Assembly: GCF_001194135.2 (NCBI RefSeq) | Contig: NC_069003.1 | Location: 9,779,613 to 9,843,612 of the forward strand | Length of the DNA stretch: 64,000 nt | From: Octopus bimaculoides | Lineage: Eukaryota | Direction of reading: 5' to 3' | Shown here: one piece after another, positions 1-53,244 of the stretch | How positions within the stretch are numbered: the stretch's first letter is position 1 | Layout of the letters: the number at the start of each line of letters is the position of its first letter | Program-made: the position numbers and the translations under genes | The notes under the pieces: generated by a model | Database searches by the model: none | What the model was told of the DNA's origin: nothing | Seen by the model: only the letters and a program-made list of their open reading frames with translations

Positions 1-280
1 CTACAACATCACTATTCTCTCTCCTACACTGTCTTGCAACCCGAAATACCTCGAGTCTTTGGTCCTCACGGCGCAGAACATTGGCAAATCTTTCCTTATC
101 TGCTTCCCCTCTGGCTAAATAAACCTGTCGCCTAGCCTCCCTTCTGGCACATTGGTACAATTCCCTGCTACCACCGTTCTTCCAGTCCTTCCAAGCTTGT
201 TTCTTTTGTCTAATAGCCCTGTCTACCTCCTTGTTCCACCACCACGTTACTCTGGGTTGGGAGGGGACCTTACACCACCC
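1..280 (-). mobile_element. RTE-clade LINE ORF2 fragment (EN-RT linker), truncated by window edge
   Basis: Minus strand reads ...PRVTWWWNKEVDRAIRQKKQAWKDWKNGGSRELYQCARREARRQVYLARGEADKERFANVLRREDQRLEVFRVARQ, the WW-N linker typical of RTE ORF2. Confidence 0.75.
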
Positions 281-1190
281 ACAAATCTGGTCGGTGGCTT
301 TCAACCCTATATGCTGATATAGGGTGAAATTAATAATTAATAATTTCACCAAGTAGTTTGGTATGTTAAAAGAACCATTATCGGTAAACTTATACAAAAA
401 TTTTATAATTATAAGCATAATTATAATTAGGGTTCAGCAAAATTGCTTCACCACATACCAAAATTTAGAAATAGCAGTTAAATACTATTCCAGTGCTTTT
501 ACGTGCCACTAGCACAAGGACCAGTCAGGCGGTTCTGGCAACGACTGCACTCAAAAGGTGTTTTTTAGCATTGTCATTCTAGCCTTTTTTCATACAATCA
601 CATATAATTCATCCCAAAAAACCAGCCTTTACATAAGAGTTTAACTTCCACTAGCGGAAGCTATACACATCTTTCAGAAAGTTCCATAGCAATATAACTT
701 TATGCAGCATTCACTGTTAGTTTAAGTGCAGGCTATGATGCAAGACAGAATAAAGGGGCTTTTGTTAGCTTATCTCTCCGAAAAAATAGCTCCCTTTGCT
801 AATGAATAAAATAAACTCACAGAGGGGAAATTCCAGCATCTTCCTTCAATTTCCTTACACCATTTATGTGGCTGTTTCTGACAAGAAATTTCGCTTTCAT
901 GTAAAACAACTATATTTTGTAGTCATTATCCATAATCTATTCCCAAAACACTTCAGTAGTTCTACTTTGCATCACTTGCAAATTTATATGTTTTATGATC
1001 ATTAAAGTACAACAACCTCCACAATAACCAGTCTTCAATTTGGTTTTCTGTTCCTAGGTTAATCAGAGACATAGATTGCTGTGCTACTCATAAACCTTCC
1101 CAGTAGTTCAATTATTTGGTGAAAAAAATACCACCAAAGCAACTTAAACCATCCAAAAGATGGGTACATTTGATGATAATGATATACACC

Positions 1191-1645
1191 TTGAAGTATA
1201 TTTACCACTTAAATGTGGCTAACCACTAAGGGTGGATGCTACTTTAGCTTGTAGCCCCAGGAGGACACTTTCTCCAGCTGGCTATTGACACGCATTCTGT
1301 GCCCTATCAGTATTTGCAAAGGGAAGCCATCCTTCCCATCGTCGACCTGACGTGATATGCACAGACCTGGGTTTCTAGGTATTTACCCATCATCAGCGCA
1401 CAACAATCACCGGTCTTCGATGCGAAGGGGTCCCAATGCATATACATATATCCTTTTTCCAGTGACGCAAATTCACTGATCTCGAAAAAGTGTAAACAAG
1501 CAATAATAAATCTCTGAACGAAGTATAAACAGTAGCTGCACGACAACGTGAAGTATATTTGCCACTTAAATGCGGCTAACCACTAAGGGTGAATGCTACT
1601 GTAGTTTGTAGCCCTCAGAGAACATCTCCTCCAGCTGGCTATTGA

Positions 1646-1681
<36 letters not shown>

Positions 1682-2069
1682 NNNNNNNNNNNNNNNNNNN
1701 NNNNNNNNNNNNNNNNNNNNNNNNNNNNNNNNNNNNNNNNNNNNNNNNNNNNNNNNNNNNNNNNNNNNNNNNNNNNNNNNNNNNNNNNNNNNNNNNNNNN
1801 NNNNNNNNNNNNNNNNNNNNNNNNNNNNNNNNNNNNNNNNNNNNNNNNNNNNNNNNNNNNNNNNNNNNNNNNNNNNNNNNNNNNNNNNNNNNNNNNNNNN
1901 NNNNNNNNNNNNNNNNNNNNNNNNNNNNNNNNNNNNNNNNNNNNNNNNNNNNCAAATTCACTGATCTCGAAAAAGTGTAAACAAGCAATAATAAATCTCT
2001 GAACGAAGTATAAACAGTAGCTGCACGACAACGTGAAGTATATTTGCCACTTAAATGTGGCTGACCACT
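1191..2069 (-). mobile_element. Tandem array (~2.5 units, 357-nt period) of a hammerhead-containing non-coding repeat; candidate non-LTR retrozyme
   Basis: gaagtatattt(a/g)ccacttaaatg(t/c)ggct recurs at 1193, 1550 and 2035; 1469-1585 is nearly identical to 1953-2069; hammerhead at 1352-1410; N-gap 1682-1952 hides part of unit 2. Confidence 0.8.
1352..1410 (-). ncRNA. Type I hammerhead ribozyme (copy 1)
   Basis: RC = gtgattgt tgtgcg CTGATGA tgggt aaat accta GAAA cccagG TC tgtgca t atcac; core CUGAUGA/GAAA/GUC intact; predicted cleavage between 1364 and 1363. Confidence 0.8.
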
Positions 2070-2071
2070 GT

Positions 2072-2282
2072 ATTATGCCATCTTCCCAACTCATAAATAT
2101 CTTTTCACCAACTTTAAAGAATCTTGCTATGTCTTCCCTGGCACTTTTTCTTTTCTTGCCAGGTAGCAATTTATCAAAGACTGATTTTACTTTCCTTGCA
2201 AACATCAACTCTGCTGGTGAGCTGCCTGCTGATGTATTTGGATTTCATGTCACATGGTACACTTAAAAATTGTTGAAGGTTT
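2072..2282 (-). mobile_element. Gypsy LTR retrotransposon integrase C-terminal fragment
   Basis: LQQFLSV(fs)YHVT*NPNTSAGSSPAELMFARKVKSVFDKLLPGKK...FKVGEKIFMSWEDGII, matching the YRxTP...GxSPAELMFGR integrase tail. Confidence 0.75.
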
Positions 2283-2532
2283 GCTCGTACCTTCTGTAGT
2301 ATGATGCTTCAAAGGTAACTCCTTTATCAGGTTCATATTTGAACTCTGTCATGGAGTTTTCTGGTGAGAACACTTTTTCTGAATTTCCTGACGACTTCAT
2401 TAATTGCAGCATTTGTTGCTGTAATAGTACTTGCTGTTCTTCTTCTTCTTTCAGTTGTTGTTGTTGTTGCAACCAGAGCACATCAACCAACAAAATTTCC
2501 ATAATTTTTACAATTTTCTTCATAACATTCAC
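2283..2532 (-). mobile_element. Gypsy gag N-terminal fragment
   Basis: Q-rich start then NSMTEFKYEPDKGVTFEASYYRRYE, resembling the gag N-terminus of Mag/Cer-type Gypsy elements. Confidence 0.6.
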
Positions 2533-2669
2533 ACAACAAAACTCTGTGATTTTCTCAACTTCTCATGAGTTGTTAATTCCTCATAGAGTTTCTTAATTCC
2601 TCGTAGAGTTGTGTAAATCCTCGTCGAGTTTATTAATTCATCATGAGTTGTTTAAATCCTTATCACCAT

Positions 2670-2857
2670 TGTTATAATACTTTTAAATGTTGGACTGTTA
2701 TAACGCCTACTTCAGTATACAGAATATTTAGTGAAACCAGTGAAGACACAACTATCTCTGACTGCCTACTACATACTCTGGTACTTCCTGTACTTCTCTT
2801 TACTTATAATGACTAGGTTATTCCATTCATTATGTGAGAGGGGTGTACCCTACAACA
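2670..2857 (-). mobile_element. 5' LTR (188 bp) of the Gypsy remnant, followed by a PBS
   Basis: TG...CA ends with short inverted termini (TGTTGTA...TATAACA on minus); immediately followed by TGGTGATAAGGAT (2668-2656), a TGGCGACGAGGAT-like PBS. Confidence 0.7.
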
Positions 2858-3165
2858 TAATAAAAAAATAAAAAAATAATCGATTTTCAGACACGATAAC
2901 TATAGCAGCATCTGGCAACGCAGACCTCCCTCAGACCCAGGTATCCTATGCTTGCTCCTTTCTCTCATTCAGTTGCTTTCAAGCCTCAGTTGCTTTAGAA
3001 TGAAAATAATGCTGAAAAATAAAAATCCGACATATGACCAGATTGACTTACGACTTGTCATTTGGAGTGGAACTCGGTTTTAAGTCAAGAAAAAGGTGTA
3101 GATTCATTTAAACCCAAACTCAACGATATTTTTTGCACAAGACCATCAATATCAAAGGCAGGGTA

Positions 3166-3493
3166 CCATATTTTCCGGTCTATAAAACACATCAATATTT
3201 AAGCCACAGGGCTGAATTTAGGGGAAAATTTTGGTTTTATCCACACATAAAGTACACCAGCATTTAAAGCACACTGGTGTTTAAAGGATTTAAACAGCAT
3301 AAATGAATCCATGGTCTGTTCATGGCACAAAAAAGAATATTCACAACTGACCAAAAAGACCAAAAGAGCAAATCATGGCAAGAAAGCGAGATGGCCAGTC
3401 CTAGAAAAATACATACATTAGGCGCACCATTCTATAAGCCACACACTAAATTTCCCAGGTAAAAAGTAGTGGCTTATATACTGGAAAATACAG
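3166..3493. mobile_element. Tc1/mariner-superfamily (pogo/Tc2-like) MITE
   Basis: Imperfect 25-bp TIRs ccatattttccggtctataa / ttatatactggaaaatacag, flanked by TA on both sides (3164-3165, 3494-3495). Confidence 0.65.
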
Positions 3494-3769
3494 TAAGTCA
3501 ATTACACAAAAGTATGGAGAAAAATACCTCCAACCATAGACTGCTGTCTACAATTCTCCTCTTATCATCAAACAATAAACCTGACCTTTTCTTTAATGGC
3601 AGATCATTTTCAGAAATATTCTTGAATCTTGAGATTATCTCCTTTTTTCAAGCGGAACTAGTTGTAACTGCCATGGGATGTCCCCTAGAACTGGAGAGAA
3701 CTTTACTAAATGGATTTATGTTGTATGGTATTTAATACACCTGTATATTAAATGCAACTGGCATCCGTA

Positions 3770-10112: not shown

Positions 10113-11590
10113 AGCTGAGGTAGCAACACTGACTGCTGGATGCTACATGAGTCATCTGAGAGAGGAGCAATGTCACCTGATTGCTTGTTGCCTTAGCTGT
10201 GGTAGCAACATTGATTGCTGGATGCTACACGAGTCATCCGAGAGAGCAATGTCACCTGATTGCTTGTTACCTTAGCTGAGGTAGCAACACTGACTGCTGG
10301 ATGCTACATGAGTCAGTTGTGGAAGCTGATTGCTTCCTGAGCTAAATGCAACAGTAAAATCATCTGATTGCATGAGAATACAACAGTGCTCTATCAGCAG
10401 CCTTTGTTGAGATAGAGATGCTGATTGCTAAATGATTCATCTGAGAGATTAATATCACCTGATTGCTTGTCGATTCAGCTGACATAACACTGTTGATTAC
10501 TAGCTGAGTCATCTGAGTTAGCAATGTCACCTGATTGCTTGCTGACTAAGCAGCAGTAACAATGTTGATTGTTAGTTAAGAAGGCAAGCTGGCAGAATCA
10601 TTAGCACACTGGGCAAAATGCTTAGTGGCATTTCATCTGTTTTTATGCTCTGAGTTCAAATTCTGGCGAGGTCAACTTTGCCTTTCATCCTTTCAGGGTC
10701 GATAAATTAAGTACCAGTTGCGTACTGGGGTCAATCTAATCCATTTAATCCCTTTGTCTGTCCCCTCTATGTTTAGCCTCTTGTGGGCAATAAAGAAATA
10801 AGAAACGTGAGCATGCTGGGCGAAATGCTTAGCGGTATTTCACCTGTTTTTACATTCTGAGTTCAAATTCCGTTGAGGCCGACTTTGCCTTTCATCCTTC
10901 CGGGGTCGATAAATTAAGTACCAGTTGAGTACTGGGGTCGATCTTATCGACTGGTCCCCCTCACCCAAAATTTTGGACCTTGTGCCAAGAGTAGAAAAGA
11001 ATGTTATTTGCTTTTTGAGTTAGATGAGATAAGAAATTCACCTGAGTCAGCCAAAGCAACAAAGACATGTAGTTACCACATATGTCAGCTGAAGAGGTAA
11101 TGTCACCTGATTGCTTGTTAATTTAGCTGAAATAACAATGTTAACTGCTAACAGCTACCTGAGATAACAAAGTCGCCCGATTGCTAGTTTACTCAGCAAC
11201 ACCAGTGGCTGGTGCCTTCTTGAATTAACTGGGACAGGAAGATCACCTGATTGCTAGTTGAGTTAGCAATGTTGATTGCTGGTTGCTTCTTGAGTTTACT
11301 GAGACAGCAGAGTTTCCAGATTACTTGTTAGGTGAGCAACATTGATTCGGCTCTCATTTGCAGTAACAATGTTGACTGCTCTTTGCTTTCAAAGTTTTTT
11401 TCTTTTATATGTTTCAGCCCAAAGACTGTGGCCATGCTGGAGCACCACCAGTAGGACTATAAATAGTCCAGCTATTTATTAAAAATCCATCAATTAAACA
11501 TCGCCAGTTGAAACAGCAAAATCACCTGATTGCTTGTTGAGAAAGCAATGTTGATTCAGCAATTTTAATTGCTGGTTGCTTGATATATCT
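10113..11590. repeat. Degenerate ~80-bp minisatellite rich in tcacctgattgct, split by SINEs
   Basis: Units start at 10113, 10195, 10274 (periods 82 and 79); the motif recurs to ~11535. Confidence 0.8.
10581..11000 (+). mobile_element. SINE A1 followed by or nested in SINE A2
   Basis: Two consecutive tRNA-head/core units; first tail aataaagaaataagaa, second tail ccccaaaattttggaccttgtgcc. Confidence 0.85.
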
Positions 11591-42654: not shown

Positions 42655-43268
42655 GCAAAGGCACAATGGTTAGAGCTGCCGGGCTCATAATCATAAGGTA
42701 GTGAGTTCAATTCCTGGACTGAGCTGTATTGTGTTCTTGAGCAAGACACTTTATTTCACGTTGCTCCAGTTCACTCAGCTGGCAAAAATAAGTTACAACG
42801 TCATTGGTGCCAAGCTGTATCGGCCTTTGCCTTTCCCTTGGATAACATCAGTGGTGTGAAGATGGGAGGCTGGTTTGCATGGGTGACTGCTGGTCTTCCA
42901 TAAACAATCATGCCTAGACTTGTGCCTAGAAGAGTAACTTTGTAGATGCAATCCCATGGTCATTTGCGACTAAAGGGAGTCTTTGCAAGTTCAATTCCCA
43001 GACTGGGCTGCGTGTTGTGTTCTTGAGCAAGACACTTTATTTCACGTTGGTCCAGTTCACTCAGCTGTAGAAACAAGTTGGAACATCACTGGTGCCAAGC
43101 TGTATCAGCCTTTGCCTTTCCCTTGAATAACGTCGTTGGTACAGAGAGGGGAGGCTGGTATGCATGGGTAACTGCAGGTCTTCTATAGGCAACCTTGCCT
43201 GCACTTGTGCCTCAGAGGGGAACTTTCTAGGTGCAATCCCATGGTCATTTGTAACTGAAGGGGGTCTT
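42655..43268 (+). mobile_element. Two tandem tRNA-derived SINEs (C-related variant)
   Basis: tgtgttcttgagcaagacactttatttcacgttg...gtgcaatcccatggtcattt twice. Confidence 0.8.
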
Positions 43269-44599
43269 TTATTTTATATTGATGAAACCACCACTCTGCT
43301 CCAGTAGTTTTCCTGGTAGTCATTCGTTTTCTCAATTCCTTAATTCCATATGTAAAAGGTTAATGAGGTCATTTACATAATTAAAATAGAATCGCTAACA
43401 TTGAAATCTAGCTGAGGAATTTATTATAATTCCTTCTCTTCTCAAAGAATCTACACTTCTATATTTAGTGCATGAAATAGATTGTATCCAAAGTTGATTT
43501 AACAAAATAAGGTTGGTTCTTTTGTTATTGTTTCTTTTGGGGGGGGGGCTTGTTTGTGTGGTGACAGTAATGGTGGGTCCCGATCAAAATATTGCTTTCT
43601 TCAATAGAAGGAACTATTGCTGTTTCTGTTGCGACAGCTGTAATCGCTGTTGTTGTTTTTCTATGTTGATTAACCAAGTGAATAACCAATTAAATATTGA
43701 TGGTTGCAGGAGGAGGGGAGGGGAGAGAANNNNNNNNNNNNNNNNNNNNNNNNNNNNNNNNNNNNNNNNNNNNNNNNNNNNNNNNNNNNNNNNNNNNNNN
43801 NNNNNNNNNNNNNNNNNNNNNNNNNNNNNNNNNNNNNNNNNNNNNNNNNNNNNNNNNNNNNNNNNNNNNNNNNNNNNNNNNNNNNNNNNNNNNNNNNNNN
43901 NNNNNNNNNNNNNNNNNNNNNNNNNNNNNNNNNNNNNNNNNNNNNNNNNNNNNNNNNNNNNNNNNNNNNNNNNNNNNNNNNNNNNNNNNNNNNNNNNNNN
44001 NNNNNNNNNNNNNNNNNNNNNNNNNNNNNNNNNNNNNNNNNNNNNNNNNNNNNNNNNNNNNNNNNNNNNNNNNNNNNNNNNNNNNNNNNNNNNNNNNNNN
44101 NNNNNNNNNNNNNNNNNNNNNNNNNNNNNNNNNNNNNNNNNNNNNNNNNNNCAGAAAGAGGGGCAGAAGAGAGATGAGGGAGAGGTAACAGAGGGGGAGA
44201 GACAGAAGGTGAGAGGGAAAGGGAAAGAGAGACAGACAGAGGGAGAAGCAGACAGACAGGAGAGAGAGAGAGAGAGAAATAGGAAACTTATATATAGTTG
44301 TTCAATCTGCAGAAAAATAGCAGCTAATTTTTCCCTCAGATCAAACCCCTGCTCTAAGCATTTTAAACAAGACACGTCTCATTGAAGATTATAATCTTAG
44401 ATAACTCAAAAAGGTTGGATGGTCACAGTTGGAATATTCTTACTCATAGTTTACTCTGAATCAAGGTTTGACCTAAGGATAAAAAAACAGCATCAACACT
44501 AGCATATATTCAAATGTGTGAAATCCGAACATGTGATTGGCTGCAAACTGGTAGGAACCTCTAGAATTCTTTGTATGAATGAGGAACAGAATGAGACTA

Positions 44600-45832
44600 G
44601 ATGAAATAATGTGGCTTTGTTCCAGAGAGAAGCACCACCGATGCTATTTTCATAGTCTGGCAACTTCAAGAGAAGTATTTAGCAAAGAACAAACCATTGT
44701 ACTTGGCATTTGTTGATCTAGAGAAAGCCTTCGGCAATGTACCTCACTCAGTGATATGGTGGGCTCTGAGGAAGCTAGGGGTAGACAAATGGCTTGTGAA
44801 AGCAGTATGGGGGTACTGTTTGTAAGGTAAGAGTTAGCCATGGGTACAGTGATGTATTTAGTGAATTTAGAGTACAGGTAGGTGTTCACCAAGGTTTGGT
44901 CCTCGGCCTTCTTCTATTAATCATCTCCAGACCATAACAGAGGAATTTAATACTGGAAGCCCATGGAAACTACAATATGCTGATGATCTGGCCTCATACC
45001 AGAATCTGTAACAGAATTAGAAAAGAAATTCCAGGCCCAGAACCTGGAAGGAAATGGTCTTAAAGTTAACTTGGTAAAGACCAAGATCCCAGTAAGTAAG
45101 AAGTTGAACAGAATCCTTCACCCTTCTAGTAAATAGCTCTGCTTGATATGTATGAAGGGTGTAGGCAGAAATTCCATTCAGTGTACCCAGAGAAAACTAT
45201 GGACACACAAGAGGTGCAGTAGAATAATAGGAAGTTTAACAAGTAGTGTTTGTATATGGACGATGTACAGGAGCCATAAAGACCACAGATACACAGGAAA
45301 ATGATTTCCTCAAATGTCCCAGAGGCTCTCTGGATGTTGTAGATAATTCTTGTTACGTAGATGATCTAATTAGCAGTGGGGGAGGTTGTGCATAGTGTAA
45401 TTGCTAGAATGAGAATAGGATAAAGTTCAACCTCTCTCTCTGAGAGAAAGGAAGATTGTAGGATGCATGTATATGAACTGCAATGTTACAGGGTAGTGAG
45501 ACACGGGCCCTGAATGCAGAGGATATGCAAATGCTAAAGAAGAATGAAGCTGGTACGTTCTGCTGGATGTACAATGTCAGTGCACAAGTGTGGATAGCAC
45601 AAGAGTATTGAGAGAAAGTTAAGCATAAGATAAATTATATGCAGTGTGCAAGGGAGGAGACTGGTTGGGTCATGTGATGCAGATAGATGAGGACAGATGC
45701 ATAAACACAAATGTTGATCACTAAAAGTGGAGGGACGATGTTGGAGAGGAAGACCCAGGAAGACATGGGGTGAAGAACTGAAGACCAATCTCAAAACGAT
45801 GGGCCTTACAAAGGAGATGATAGAAGACTGTC
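44600..45832 (+). mobile_element. RTE-clade LINE, decayed RT domain to 3' end of ORF2
   Basis: QLQEKYLAKNKPLYLAFVDLEKAF; GVHQG; YADDL-like tatgctgatgatctgg at ~44976; C-terminal EGRCWRGRPRKTW. Confidence 0.85.
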
Positions 45833-51559: not shown

Positions 51560-53205
51560 CTTTTTCTAAGCAAATACATTGTCAGTAAAAAAGAATAATG
51601 TAGGTCGTCCGCTTTTTAAAATCGTCACCTACACAGACCACAAATTTGTCATCTTTACGGTCGACTTGAATTTGACTACGTAGACAGGGACCCGATTTAC
51701 TGGAAGCTGAACGAGTCACTCAAGGCGTGCCAAGCTTATTAGAGACCGGATTAGTGAATTAGTTAAGCAGACATTAACGAGGTCAATTCTTAACAATAAA
51801 TGGTGGTACGCCCTGAAAATAACAATCAGAATAGAATCGATTAGATTGAGTAAGGAACAAGCGATAGAAAAAAATTAATACAGAGGGAAAGCTAGTTAGA
51901 AACTTAGAAGAGGCACTTAGGATAGGCATTGCAACTGCTGGGGGTGAGTTTGGTCCCCGACCAAGTTTTCAACGCGAAGTTCGAAGGATGAATTGTCAGA
52001 GCTAAGGCAAGTGCTCTAAGAAACGAGGCACTTAAAACTGCTGGATGGTCCCAAGTGGCAATGGCTCAACGTGGCAACAAAGCCATAAAGTGAGCGCATG
52101 ATACTTGAGCCCAAGTAGATGTGCGGTATTTCAGCAGCACTTCACCCAACAGTTTGGGACGAATGGTGAGCCAGAACGCAGGACGGACTTTATTGCCTAC
52201 CTCGACGGCATGCCACGACTCTCGGTGGTAGGTGAGGCGAGGTGTTGCGAAACGCTGATAAGAGCCATGGAAATACGGGATACGATAATGTGCTGCACGG
52301 TGGGCAAATCGCCTGGTTTGGATGGTGTCTGCCCTACGAGTTTTACTATTATATGCCAGACTTGTTTGGCGATCACTTAGTAGATATCTACCGCAACTGG
52401 CAACAGAACGGGAGAATCCCTAGCTCTGTGAGCCGAGGGGTGGTGGCACTTCCGAGAAAGGACCCAAACAAGGGGGATCGAATAGAAAATTTTAGGCCCA
52501 TAATGCTGCTGAAATCAGACTTCAAAATTTCGGCCAAGGTGCTAGCAAAGAGATTGGCGTCGTCGAGGAACTGATTGGTGATGCGCAAACATGCATCATC
52601 CCAAGCAGATCCATCCACGACAACCTCCACTTCATACGACACGTCATTGACAGGGTGTGTAATGAAGCTGGCATGGGTGGGGCTTTGATCAATTTGGATT
52701 AATCTAAAGCCAATACTTGGTGGCCGTTCTCACAGCAGCCGGTTTCGGTCCTATTTTCCGTGGCTGGATCGCAGCAATGTACAGCGACATCTCCTCAGTA
52801 GTTCAGGTTAATGGTTACCTATCGGAAACATTCAGCATCATGCATTCGGTCCGTGAAGTGTGTCCCCTCTCGTCTTTCCTATATGTAATGTCTCTAGAGC
52901 CACTACTGGTGAAATTGGAGGCGTTGAGAGGCATTCCGCGTTAACAAGAACGTGGGAGAACCGTGTTGGCATACGCAGACGATATCACCATCGTAGTGTC
53001 GAATAGCAGGCACATAGATCTGGTTGGTACCACTCTAAAAGAATACGAGGCGATGATTGGAGCAAAAATTAATCAAGAGAAGTCAGTGGGCCTGCAACTC
53101 GGCACCTGGGGTGGCAGGTCCATGCCTTTCAACAGCGTCATGGGACGCTGGGCGGAAGGACCGGTTAAACTGCATGGAATCTGGTTCAGTCCAGATCTCC
53201 ATACT
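51560..53205 (+). mobile_element. Tx1/L1-clade LINE ORF2 remnant (APE C-terminus plus RT)
   Basis: YTDHKFV, YWKLNESL, KSPGLDG(fs)LPYEFY, NFRPIMLLKSDFKISAKVLAKRL, CPLS, LAYADDITIVVS, GAKINQEKSVGL. Confidence 0.9.
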
Positions 53206-53244
53206 ATACTGTGTAGTCGACAAAATCAAAAACAAACAATGTGA

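What the first reader, a model, noticed from the sequence alone, without database searches (positions are those of the whole stretch)
1191..2069. Tandem 357-nt hammerhead repeat: candidate cephalopod non-LTR retrozyme / circRNA element
Seen: a non-coding unit repeats head-to-tail with a 357-nt period (1193 to 1550; a third partial copy after the gap) and contains a complete type I hammerhead on the minus strand; two more dispersed copies occur at 18.5 and 22 kb in opposite orientations, so the family is mobile. Known: tandem type I hammerhead repeats of a few hundred nt in amphibians, cnidarians and bivalves self-cleave to monomers that circularise (non-LTR retrozymes), and PLEs are the proposed mobilising partners. 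Inference: read-through transcription of this array would release a ~357-nt monomer or circRNA. I am not aware of a description in octopus but cannot search. The second ribozyme is predicted to lie in the N-gap (1682-1952).
Basis: partly seen in the sequence, partly recalled or inferred. Interest (0 to 1): 0.92.

Follow-up and report, generated by a model that had tools for sequence, protein, structure and literature searches.

The report
Hammerhead-ribozyme tandem repeat (retrozyme-like)
A 357-base non-coding repeat carrying a small self-cutting RNA motif (a hammerhead ribozyme) sits head-to-tail here, with two scattered copies nearby; this kind of mobile element is already known in mussels, corals and salamanders, so it is a new example, not a new kind.

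Summary
A 357-nt unit repeats head-to-tail at 1193-2069, and two more copies lie at 18510-18781 (+) and 21936-22164 (-). On the window's minus strand each unit carries a type I hammerhead: window 1410->1352, predicted cut between 1364 and 1363.

Rfam's hammerhead models do not report it. Three other tests support it:
- A structural descriptor finds only this family in the window, and nothing in 300 shuffles.
- A covariance model built only from four experimentally cleaving retrozyme hammerheads (coral, mussel, two axolotl) ranks the two complete copies first and second in 64 kb (E about 5e-4 and 0.02).
- The copies differ by pair-preserving changes in helix I and keep helix III palindromic.

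The unit is non-coding, 44.5% GC and strongly self-paired, and no Penelope-like ORF is in the window. The best reading is a partly decayed non-LTR retrozyme family.

Not shown: a second ribozyme (it would fall in the N gap), the true array length, self-cleavage, circular RNA, and the host species. The one readable array ribozyme carries weakening changes. This is a new member of a known kind, of moderate interest.

The parts
1193..1549 (-). Complete 357-nt unit (copy 1). Non-coding, 44.5% GC. In unit coordinates u (u1 = first base after the predicted cut) it covers u172-357 followed by u1-171.
1352..1410 (-). Type I hammerhead of copy 1. Closing stem GUGAU/AUCAC, internal loop, 6-bp helix I, CUGAUGA box, 5-bp helix II (U10.1-A11.1), GAAA, 2-bp helix III inside the octamer ACCCAGGU, GUC. 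Predicted cut between 1364 and 1363.
   Evidence: 16.5 bits, E 0.021
1411..1495 (-). About 85-nt segment (u226-310) present only in the tandem unit. It supplies the outer 5' strand of a long helix that pairs the two ends of the monomer RNA.
1550..1648 (-). Partial second unit (u73-171), 87-88% identical to copy 1. It is joined head-to-tail to copy 1 inside uninterrupted sequence, and its sense-5' end abuts (TA)n.
1649..1681 (.). (TA)16.5 microsatellite that is not part of the unit. It interrupts or bounds copy 2 at u72/73.
1682..1952 (.). Assembly gap of estimated length. If the array is continuous, the missing u253-357/u1-72, including a second hammerhead, would fall here. This is unverifiable.
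1953..2034 (-). Unit tail (u172-252), 100% identical to 1468-1549.
2035..2069 (-). Terminal 35-nt partial unit (u137-171) at the sense-5' end of the array. It repeats the last 35 nt of the array's sense-3' end and is similar in length to the 30-40-bp 'tail' of Penelope-type insertions.
   Evidence: PMC8557442, PMC11167929
18510..18781 (+). Dispersed monomer copy (u311-357, u1-~224), flanked on both sides by (TG)n(TA)n. Its hammerhead at 18510-18568 is intact, with the perfect palindrome ACCCGGGU. Predicted cut between 18556 and 18557.
   Evidence: (22.2 bits, E 4.7e-4)
21936..22164 (-). Dispersed copy (at least u329 through u204) cut by the gap at 22165. Partial hammerhead at 22124-22164 with the palindrome ACUCGAGU and an A-A mismatch at 10.1/11.1. 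TA/TG microsatellites lie on both sides.

Best explanation
This is a family of short non-autonomous retroelements of the non-LTR retrozyme kind. The unit is 357 nt, non-coding, and its sense strand (the window's minus strand) encodes a canonical-style metazoan type I hammerhead.

Inferred mechanism, by analogy with the coral, mussel and axolotl elements:
- A read-through transcript of two or more units folds two neighbouring ribozymes into a double hammerhead through the palindromic helix III.
- Each ribozyme cuts after GUC, releasing a unit-length RNA with 5'-OH and 2',3'-cyclic phosphate ends.
- A long helix holds these ends together, so they can be ligated into a circle.
- The RNA is copied back into DNA by a Penelope-like element's RT/endonuclease. 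This gives more-than-unit tandem insertions and 5'-truncated solo copies, preferentially at TA/TG microsatellites.

Shown here: the repeat architecture, the ribozyme motif and its covariation, the lack of coding capacity, the self-paired fold and the association with microsatellites.

Inferred only: transcription, cleavage, circularisation and the mobilising partner.

The copies in this window are old (12-18% diverged). The one readable array ribozyme looks weakened, so this particular locus is probably a decaying copy, not an active source.
For: - Tandem junction and period 357.
- All core nucleotides and three helices are present in two complete copies. The descriptor finds only this family and gives 0 hits in 300 shuffles.
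- A covariance model built only from four published, experimentally cleaving retrozyme hammerheads (PMC7229834 supplement; model) ranks the two complete copies 1st and 2nd in the whole window with filters off: 22.2 bits (E 4.7e-4) and 16.5 bits (E 0.021). The next hit scores 12.4 bits and lacks the core.
- 97.7% of pair cells are standard pairs. The helix I inner stem has 2 double-sided and 3 single-sided pair-preserving changes between copies. Slid registers give at most 60% pairing.
- The helix III octamer stays palindromic through a double change, ACCCGGGU versus ACUCGAGU. That only makes sense for the dimeric helix III described for metazoan hammerheads (PMC4209133).
- No core position differs between copies that are 16-18% diverged overall. 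My arithmetic gives a chance of about 0.01.
- Cofolding two 18k-type ribozymes gives the domain-swapped double hammerhead at -41.1 kcal/mol, against a dimer MFE of -42.1 and two separate monomers at -37.2.
- The monomer is 44.5% GC and folds with z = -3.3 (linear) or -4.0 (circular), with its ends paired.
- No ORF homologue, no tRNA-like head, and no PLE ORF by tblastn with the Poseidon_Ac protein.
- 5 of 7 copy boundaries abut TA/TG runs, binomial P about 9e-5. This matches the PLE microsatellite bias (PMC8557442).
- U at 10.1 also occurs in the active axolotl HHR_Amex2.
Against: - Rfam's curated hammerhead models report nothing, even at E<=10 on 81-nt slices.
- 10.1-11.1 is U-A instead of the near-universal G-C.
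- Covariation rests on only two complete copies and one partial copy. The 3' strand of helix I is UG-rich and can pair in shifted registers. The monomer MFE uses such a register and pairs helix II with helix III sequence.
- For array copy 1 the active folds are poor: monomer hammerhead -8.5 against MFE -19.5, and double hammerhead -25.2 against -42.7.
- Only one ribozyme in the array is readable, and spacing across the gap is 485, not 357.
- The right-hand contig may duplicate the left-hand junction (98% identity).
- There are no expression data, no additional genomic copies and no partner element.
- The microsatellite flanks could instead have grown from a TA-rich stretch inside the unit (window 1441-1455).
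Confidence: 0.7

Rival explanations
1. The unit is the pseudo-LTR, or a solo fragment, of an autonomous Penelope-like element. The short array would be a by-product of the partial-tandem insertion typical of PLEs, not an independent non-autonomous family.
For: PLEs carry hammerheads in their pLTRs, insert as partial tandems or inverted copies, add 30-40-bp tails and prefer microsatellites (PMC4209133, PMC8557442, PMC11167929). Here there is a 35-nt terminal extension, sense-3' ends 33 nt apart (u171 versus u204) and microsatellite flanks. A 2026 preprint finds vertebrate retrozymes to be sister to pLTRs.
Against: Two unit-to-unit junctions (1549/1550 and 2034/2035) join 357-nt units directly, with no room for an ORF. 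No RT/GIY-YIG similarity exists anywhere in the window. The ribozyme has a 2-bp helix III with a loop, a 6-bp helix I and a 5-bp helix II. That is the retrozyme style, not the PLE min-HHR style, which has no loop 3, a 7-8-bp helix II and a 4-5-bp helix I.
Confidence: 0.12
2. An ordinary short interspersed or satellite repeat happens to contain a hammerhead-like string. There would be no ribozyme activity and no RNA-circle biology.
For: Rfam models are silent. The U-A pair at 10.1-11.1 is non-canonical. Helix I is UG-rich, so pairing comes cheaply. The monomer MFE is not the hammerhead fold. The copies are old and the array copy is degraded.
Against: 0 of 300 shuffles give any descriptor hit. 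An independent covariance model ranks the two copies first and second. The helix III palindrome is kept through a double substitution, and helix I through five substitutions. The motif has the exact layout of the cleaving mussel ribozyme. There is no Pol III-type head.
Confidence: 0.13
3. The tandem arrangement is largely an assembly artefact. One copy plus allelic or collapsed contig ends would have been scaffolded across a TA microsatellite.
For: 1953-2069 is 98% identical to 1468-1584, while true neighbouring units differ by 12-13%. The gap sits next to a TA run. The window has 21 gaps.
Against: The 1549/1550 junction and the following 99 nt of a diverged second unit lie in one uninterrupted stretch, so at least 1.28 units in tandem are real. 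The right contig differs at 2 positions and then continues into unique flank.
Confidence: 0.05

Closest known systems
Non-LTR retrozymes of Mytilus galloprovincialis (Cervera & de la Pena 2020, PMC7229834)
   Same: Both are mollusc-type tandem repeats of 350-390 bp (357 here), non-coding and low in GC. The type I hammerhead has the same layout: 6-bp helix I, CUGAUGA, a short capped helix II, and GAAAC followed by a 4-nt palindromic loop and GUC. Both lack the archetypal loop1-loop2 contact nucleotides. The monomer RNA is highly self-paired.
   Different: There is no sequence similarity outside the core. Helix II here starts with U-A, not G-C, and is 5 bp. Only about 2 units and 2 solo copies are seen here, against about 5000 copies in mussel. 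No cleavage or circRNA data exist. The array copy is degraded.
Axolotl/newt satellite-2 type hammerhead repeats (HHR_Amex2, 350-bp repeat)
   Same: Both have U at position 10.1, a 2-bp helix III with a palindromic tetraloop, and a predicted dependence on dimeric (double-hammerhead) folding. Repeat length is about 350.
   Different: Axolotl has U-U at 10.1/11.1, whereas the pair here is U-A. Axolotl has about 60,000 copies with proven cleavage and circles. The host lineage differs.
min-HHRs in pseudo-LTRs of Penelope-like elements (Cervera & de la Pena 2014; Poseidon_Ac, Frangieh 2024)
   Same: Both are type I with a palindromic 15.x/16.x region. Both show tandem or inverted insertion, microsatellite or AT-rich targets and a 30-40-bp tail signature.
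   Different: PLE min-HHRs lack a loop 3, have a 7-8-bp helix II, a bulged base before 10.1 and a 4-5-bp helix I, and they flank an RT/GIY-YIG ORF. None of these applies here.
Rfam Hammerhead_1 loci annotated in the giant squid genome (PMC6962438)
   Same: They are type I hammerhead motifs in a cephalopod genome.
   Different: Those loci reach the Rfam score and were only counted, not characterised. This motif does not reach Rfam thresholds, and its host species is unverified.

Membership tests
Hammerhead ribozyme, type I | Catalytic core: C3 U4 G5 A6 N7 G8 A9, G12 A13 A14, A15.1-U16.1, H17 | tested here: met
   CUGAUGA ... GAAA ... GUC is present and unchanged in copy 1 and the 18k copy. All visible core positions are unchanged in the 22k copy.
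Hammerhead ribozyme, type I | Three helices around the core, with helix I open and helices II and III capped | tested here: met
   Helix I is 6 bp plus an internal loop plus a 5-bp closing stem. Helix II is 5 bp with a 4-nt loop. Helix III is 2 bp with a 4-nt loop. 97.7% of cells are paired, and there are pair-preserving changes in helix I.
Hammerhead ribozyme, type I | G10.1-C11.1 base pair | tested here: not met
   The pair is U-A in copy 1 and the 18k copy, and A-A in the 22k copy. A cleaving axolotl retrozyme ribozyme has U-U at this position, so this is not disqualifying.
Hammerhead ribozyme, type I | Reaches the gathering score of the curated Rfam hammerhead covariance models | tested here: not met
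   No hammerhead match at gathering score or at E<=10 on 1.3-kb and 81-nt slices.
Hammerhead ribozyme, type I | Recognised by a covariance model built from experimentally cleaving retrozyme hammerheads | tested here: met
   Model R1 was built from coral, mussel and two axolotl ribozymes. The 18k copy scores 22.2 bits (E 4.7e-4) and copy 1 scores 16.5 bits (E 0.021). These are ranks 1 and 2 of the window with filters off. E-values are rough.
Hammerhead ribozyme, type I | Site-specific self-cleavage | not testable with these tools
   Needs in vitro transcription or RNA end mapping.
Non-LTR retrozyme | Head-to-tail tandem repeats of about 150-450 bp | tested here: met
   The period is 357, and the junction at 1549/1550 lies in uninterrupted sequence. 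Array length is uncertain, from 1.3 to at least 2.1 units.
Non-LTR retrozyme | A hammerhead in every unit, so that a monomer is flanked by two cut sites | tested here: inconclusive
   Only one ribozyme is readable in the array. The second would fall in the N gap at 1682-1952, and spacing across the gap is 485 as written.
Non-LTR retrozyme | Non-coding, with no LTR/PBS/PPT and low GC (<45%) | tested here: met
   ORFs have no homologues. GC is 44.5%.
Non-LTR retrozyme | Highly self-paired monomer RNA | tested here: met
   MFE is -114.8 kcal/mol, with z = -3.3 linear and -4.0 circular. The ends are joined by a long helix.
Non-LTR retrozyme | Expressed as linear and circular unit-length RNA | not testable with these tools
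   No transcriptome access.
Non-LTR retrozyme | Co-occurrence with autonomous PLEs in the same genome | not testable with these tools
Papers report Penelope elements in octopus and squid genomes (PMC8967140, PMC8557442), but the window's species is unverified.
Penelope-like element pseudo-LTR | Repeats flank an RT + GIY-YIG ORF | tested here: not met
   Units join directly. tblastn with the Poseidon_Ac protein finds nothing at E<1. No GIY-YIG or PLE-type RT was found in ORFs of 70 aa or more.
Penelope-like element pseudo-LTR | Insertion signature: microsatellite or AT-rich targets and a 30-40-bp tail | tested here: inconclusive
   5 of 7 boundaries lie next to TA/TG runs (P about 9e-5). There is a 35-nt terminal extension, and sense-3' ends lie 33 nt apart. 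The number of loci is small, and a microsatellite seed inside the unit is an alternative explanation.
tRNA/5S/7SL-derived SINE | Pol III-type head related to a small RNA | tested here: not met
   ARAGORN finds no tRNA-like sequence, and there is no Rfam small-RNA match at E<=10.

The most novel reading that the evidence does not exclude
This would be the first characterised retrozyme family of a cephalopod. Somewhere in the genome, intact arrays with the perfect palindromic helix III would be transcribed, cut by double hammerheads and ligated into abundant 357-nt RNA circles. Penelope-like elements would reinsert these at TA/TG microsatellites. The microsatellite and tail signature seen here would then be direct genomic evidence for the retrozyme-PLE partnership in an invertebrate.
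Probability: 0.3. Interest if true: 0.5.

Novelty: new member of a known kind. Interest (0 to 1): 0.35.

Why it matters
If confirmed, it adds another lineage to the animals carrying hammerhead retrozymes. In the full-text library searched, no paper describes retrozymes in cephalopods.

It also gives a concrete unit and cut site (GUC|UGUGCA) to look for in RNA-seq as a small circular RNA.

The insertion features point to mobilisation by Penelope-like elements, which has so far been argued mainly from co-occurrence and pLTR similarity in vertebrates. These features are microsatellite-flanked copies, a 35-nt terminal extension and ends 33 nt apart.

It is also a practical warning. Rfam's hammerhead models miss this variant, so Rfam-based counts underestimate such elements.

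Tried and rejected
- Rfam scans at gathering score and at E<=10 on 1.3 kb and on two 81-nt slices found no hammerhead. Only chance snoR118 and ES173 matches appeared.
- My first manual placements of the cut site, at the downstream GUC triplets (ACGUC|A and GGUC|G), gave no helix I and were dropped. The descriptor scan found the correct GUC eight bases after GAAA.
- I tried to fetch more copies through ORF translations of the unit. No candidate was found in the protein database.
- Exact-pattern scans of metagenome and viral contigs with a conserved 24-mer gave 0 hits. The hammerhead box pattern hit 3 metagenome contigs. They are one conserved coding gene, so this is chance.
- Species identification failed by exact look-up of a window ORF and by homologues of a LINE ORF fragment. 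The host remains unverified.
- nhmmer with a family profile found no further copies in the window.
- ARAGORN found no tRNA-like head.
- Pfam on flanking and other ORFs, and tblastn with a Poseidon PLE protein, found no PLE. They found only LINE-type RT fragments and a weak DUF7083 hit.
- The inverted-repeat scan shows that the 18k and 22k pair shares only the unit, not a larger palindrome.
- A nested-bracket evaluation of a non-swapped double hammerhead was invalid because it is pseudoknotted. I replaced it with the domain-swapped topology.

Full report
**1. What is in the sequence**

Reading 1-3600, BLAST of 1191-1550 against the window and the repeat finder show the following layout:
- One complete 357-nt unit at 1193-1549.
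- The first 99-100 nt of the next unit at 1550-1648, 87-88% identical, at a spacing of exactly 357.
- A (TA)16 run at 1649-1681 that is not part of the unit.
- The N gap at 1682-1952.
- After the gap, the unit tail at 1953-2034, and the first 35 nt of another unit at 2035-2069.
- Unrelated sequence follows.

TRF did not report the array because of the gap.

The scan's program asked for a test of continuity across the gap. Both sides are on the same strand and in the correct unit order, with unit position 100 on the left and 278 on the right. However, homologous points are 485 nt apart as written, not 357. Register holds only if the gap estimate is wrong or the TA run is longer.

In addition, 1953-2069 is 98% identical to 1468-1584, whereas the neighbouring unit heads inside the left contig are only 87% alike. 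The right contig may therefore be an allelic or duplicate assembly of the same junction. What is certain is at least 1.28 units in tandem within uninterrupted sequence.

Two further copies lie at 18510-18781 and 21936-22164, in opposite orientation and 82-84% identical to the unit. The second is cut by the gap at 22165. A family profile finds no others in the window. The inverted pair shares nothing beyond the unit.

**2. The hammerhead**

Rfam found no hammerhead at gathering score, nor at E<=10, even on 81-nt slices. My first manual attempts, using the downstream GUC triplets, failed.

A simple descriptor scan then found the motif on the minus strand, 1410->1352:

GUGAU-UGU-UGUGCG-CUGAUGA-UGGGU-AAAU-ACCUA-GAA-AC-CCAG-GU-C|UGUGCA-U-AUCAC

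The parts are:
- Helix I: 6 bp, an internal loop, and a 5-bp closing stem.
- Helix II: 5 bp with a 4-nt loop.
- Helix III: 2 bp with a 4-nt loop.
- Cut site: after GUC, between window positions 1364 and 1363.

The 18k copy has the same motif at 18510-18568. The 22k copy keeps its 3' two-thirds.

With thresholds of helix I >=5, II >=4 and III >=2 bp, the window has two hits, both in this family. Three hundred dinucleotide shuffles had none.

This is the layout that Cervera and de la Pena give for canonical metazoan type I hammerheads: helix I of 6 bp, helix II of 4 bp, and helix III of 1-2 bp capped by a small palindromic loop (PMC4209133). It matches the experimentally cleaving mussel retrozyme ribozyme almost element for element (...GCGUCA-CUGAUGA-GUCU...AGAC-GAAAC-GCGC-GUC|UGGCGU; PMC7229834 supplement).

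As an independent test, I built a covariance model from only the four published cleaving retrozyme hammerheads, from coral, mussel and two axolotl repeats. I searched the whole window with filters off:

| Hit | Bits | E-value |
|---|---|---|
| 18k copy (rank 1) | 22.2 | 4.7e-4 |
| Array copy 1 (rank 2) | 16.5 | 0.021 |
| Next best (lacks the core) | 12.4 | 0.34 |

The E-values are rough.

**3. Covariation**

On the three-row alignment, 97.7% of pair cells are standard pairs. The inner stem of helix I differs at five of six 5'-strand positions between copy 1 and the 18k copy. All six pairs are kept: two by double-sided changes and three by single-sided changes. Sliding the partner strand drops pairing to 60% or less.

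The octamer spanning helix III reads:
- ACCCGGGU in the 18k copy, a perfect palindrome.
- ACUCGAGU in the 22k copy, also a perfect palindrome, reached through a double change.
- ACCCAGGU in copy 1, with one break.

Positions 15.3/16.3 cannot pair within a monomer because the loop would be 2 nt. Their covariation therefore argues for the intermolecular (double-hammerhead) helix III that is known for such ribozymes.

No core position differs among copies that are 16-18% diverged. By my arithmetic the chance of this is about 0.01.

Caveats:
- Only two complete copies are available.
- The 3' strand of helix I is UG-rich and can pair in other registers.
- The monomer MFE is an alternative fold.
- 10.1-11.1 is U-A, not G-C. 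The active axolotl HHR_Amex2 also has U at 10.1, and it showed 22% cleavage as a monomer and efficient cleavage as a dimer.

**4. Energetics**

| Ribozyme | Domain-swapped double hammerhead | Dimer MFE | Two separate monomers | Monomer hammerhead fold | Monomer MFE |
|---|---|---|---|---|---|
| 18k type | -41.1 | -42.1 | -37.2 | -10.2 | -18.6 |
| Array copy 1 | -25.2 | -42.7 | -39.0 | -8.5 | -19.5 |

All values are in kcal/mol. For the 18k type, the dimer MFE is itself a variant of the double-hammerhead topology.

Copy 1 carries three weakening features:
- G-to-A in loop 3.
- C-to-U at 11.2.
- Three G-U pairs in helix I.

The family's ribozyme therefore looks functional as a dimer, but the only readable ribozyme of the array looks weakened.

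**5. The unit as a whole**

The unit is 44.5% GC. As RNA from cut site to cut site it folds to -114.8 kcal/mol, with z = -3.3 (linear) and -4.0 (circular). The two ends are paired in a long helix that extends helix I.

Part of that helix comes from an 85-nt segment (window 1411-1495) that only the tandem unit has. In the solo copies, microsatellite occupies that position.

The unit has no protein homologues, no tRNA-like head and no other Rfam family.

**6. Mobilisation signature**

In unit coordinates (u1 = first base after the cut) the copies are:

| Locus | Content |
|---|---|
| Array | [u137-171][u172-252 ... gap ... (TA)n][u73-171][u172-357, u1-171] |
| 18k copy | u311-357, u1-~224 |
| 22k copy | at least u329 through u204 |

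Five of seven boundaries abut pure TA/TG runs. The chance for a random position is 8.7%, giving a binomial P of about 9e-5.

The array carries a 35-nt terminal extension. Two of the sense-3' ends are 33 nt apart.

Penelope-like elements are reported to insert into (TA)n/(CA)n, to form partial tandems and inverted copies, and to leave a 30-40-bp tail that corresponds to two RT start sites (PMC8557442; PMC11167929). The fit is suggestive, but it rests on three loci. A TA-rich stretch inside the unit could also have seeded the flanking microsatellites.

No PLE is in the window:
- ORFs of 70 aa or more and Pfam show only LINE-type RT fragments and a weak DUF7083 hit.
- tblastn with the Poseidon_Ac protein finds nothing.

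**7. Comparison and novelty**

The element meets the structural definition of a non-LTR retrozyme (PMC7229834). It is a tandem 150-450-bp unit, carries a type I hammerhead, is non-coding, has low GC and gives a self-paired monomer.

Three things remain untested: a ribozyme in every unit, cleavage, and circular RNA.

It is not a PLE pLTR by the features tested, and its ribozyme is of the retrozyme style, not the PLE min-HHR style.

In the full-text library, no paper describes retrozymes in cephalopods. A giant squid genome paper counts 235 Rfam hammerhead-1 loci without further analysis.

The window's species could not be verified.

**8. Verdict**

This is a real hammerhead-bearing, retrozyme-like repeat family and a new member of a known kind. 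The locus itself is probably a decaying copy.

Confidence is about 0.7 for the family assignment and about 0.25-0.3 that such elements currently yield circular RNA in this organism. Interest is 0.35.

Noticed in passing
window 10113-10315, 10418-10570, 11208-11347: Three short tandem arrays (periods 79, 72 and 70) share a hairpin-like core GCAAUnUCACCUGAUUGC. A relaxed hammerhead scan hit at 11089 in this region is not a hammerhead: helix II has only 3 bp and there is no helix I.
   Followed up: partly
window 42704-43269 and about 21780-21870: A 285-nt SINE-like unit is repeated twice in tandem (84% identical). A related fragment lies directly beside the 22k retrozyme-like copy.
   Followed up: no
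window 44610-44822 (+), 52236-53241 (+), 61293-61592 (-), 2-433 (-): These are LINE-type reverse-transcriptase or ORF2 fragments. Two hit Pfam RVT_1 just below threshold. None resembles a Penelope-like element.
   Followed up: partly
window 2070-2562 (-): The array abuts LTR-retrotransposon debris. There is a weak DUF7083 hit at 2266-2562, and by eye an integrase-C-terminus-like peptide at 2070-2208.
   Followed up: partly
window 1468-1584 versus 1953-2069: The stretch right of the gap is 98% identical to the copy 1/copy 2 junction left of it, far closer than neighbouring units are to each other (87%). This suggests an allelic or duplicated contig end, or recent conversion.
   Followed up: partly
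whole window: The window has 21 assembly gaps (4305 N). About 6% of bases lie in pure TA/TG/CA runs, so the assembly around repeats is fragile.
   Followed up: yes
L001 7531-7556, L002 1816-1841, L003 6382-6407: Metagenome contigs that match the hammerhead box pattern exactly turn out to be one conserved protein-coding gene. This is a chance match, not a ribozyme.
   Followed up: yes
window 1358-1402 (-), 18519-18561 (+): Rfam 15 hammerhead models miss this variant entirely, whereas a 4-sequence model built from published retrozyme ribozymes finds it. Rfam-based counts of animal hammerheads are likely underestimates.
   Followed up: yes
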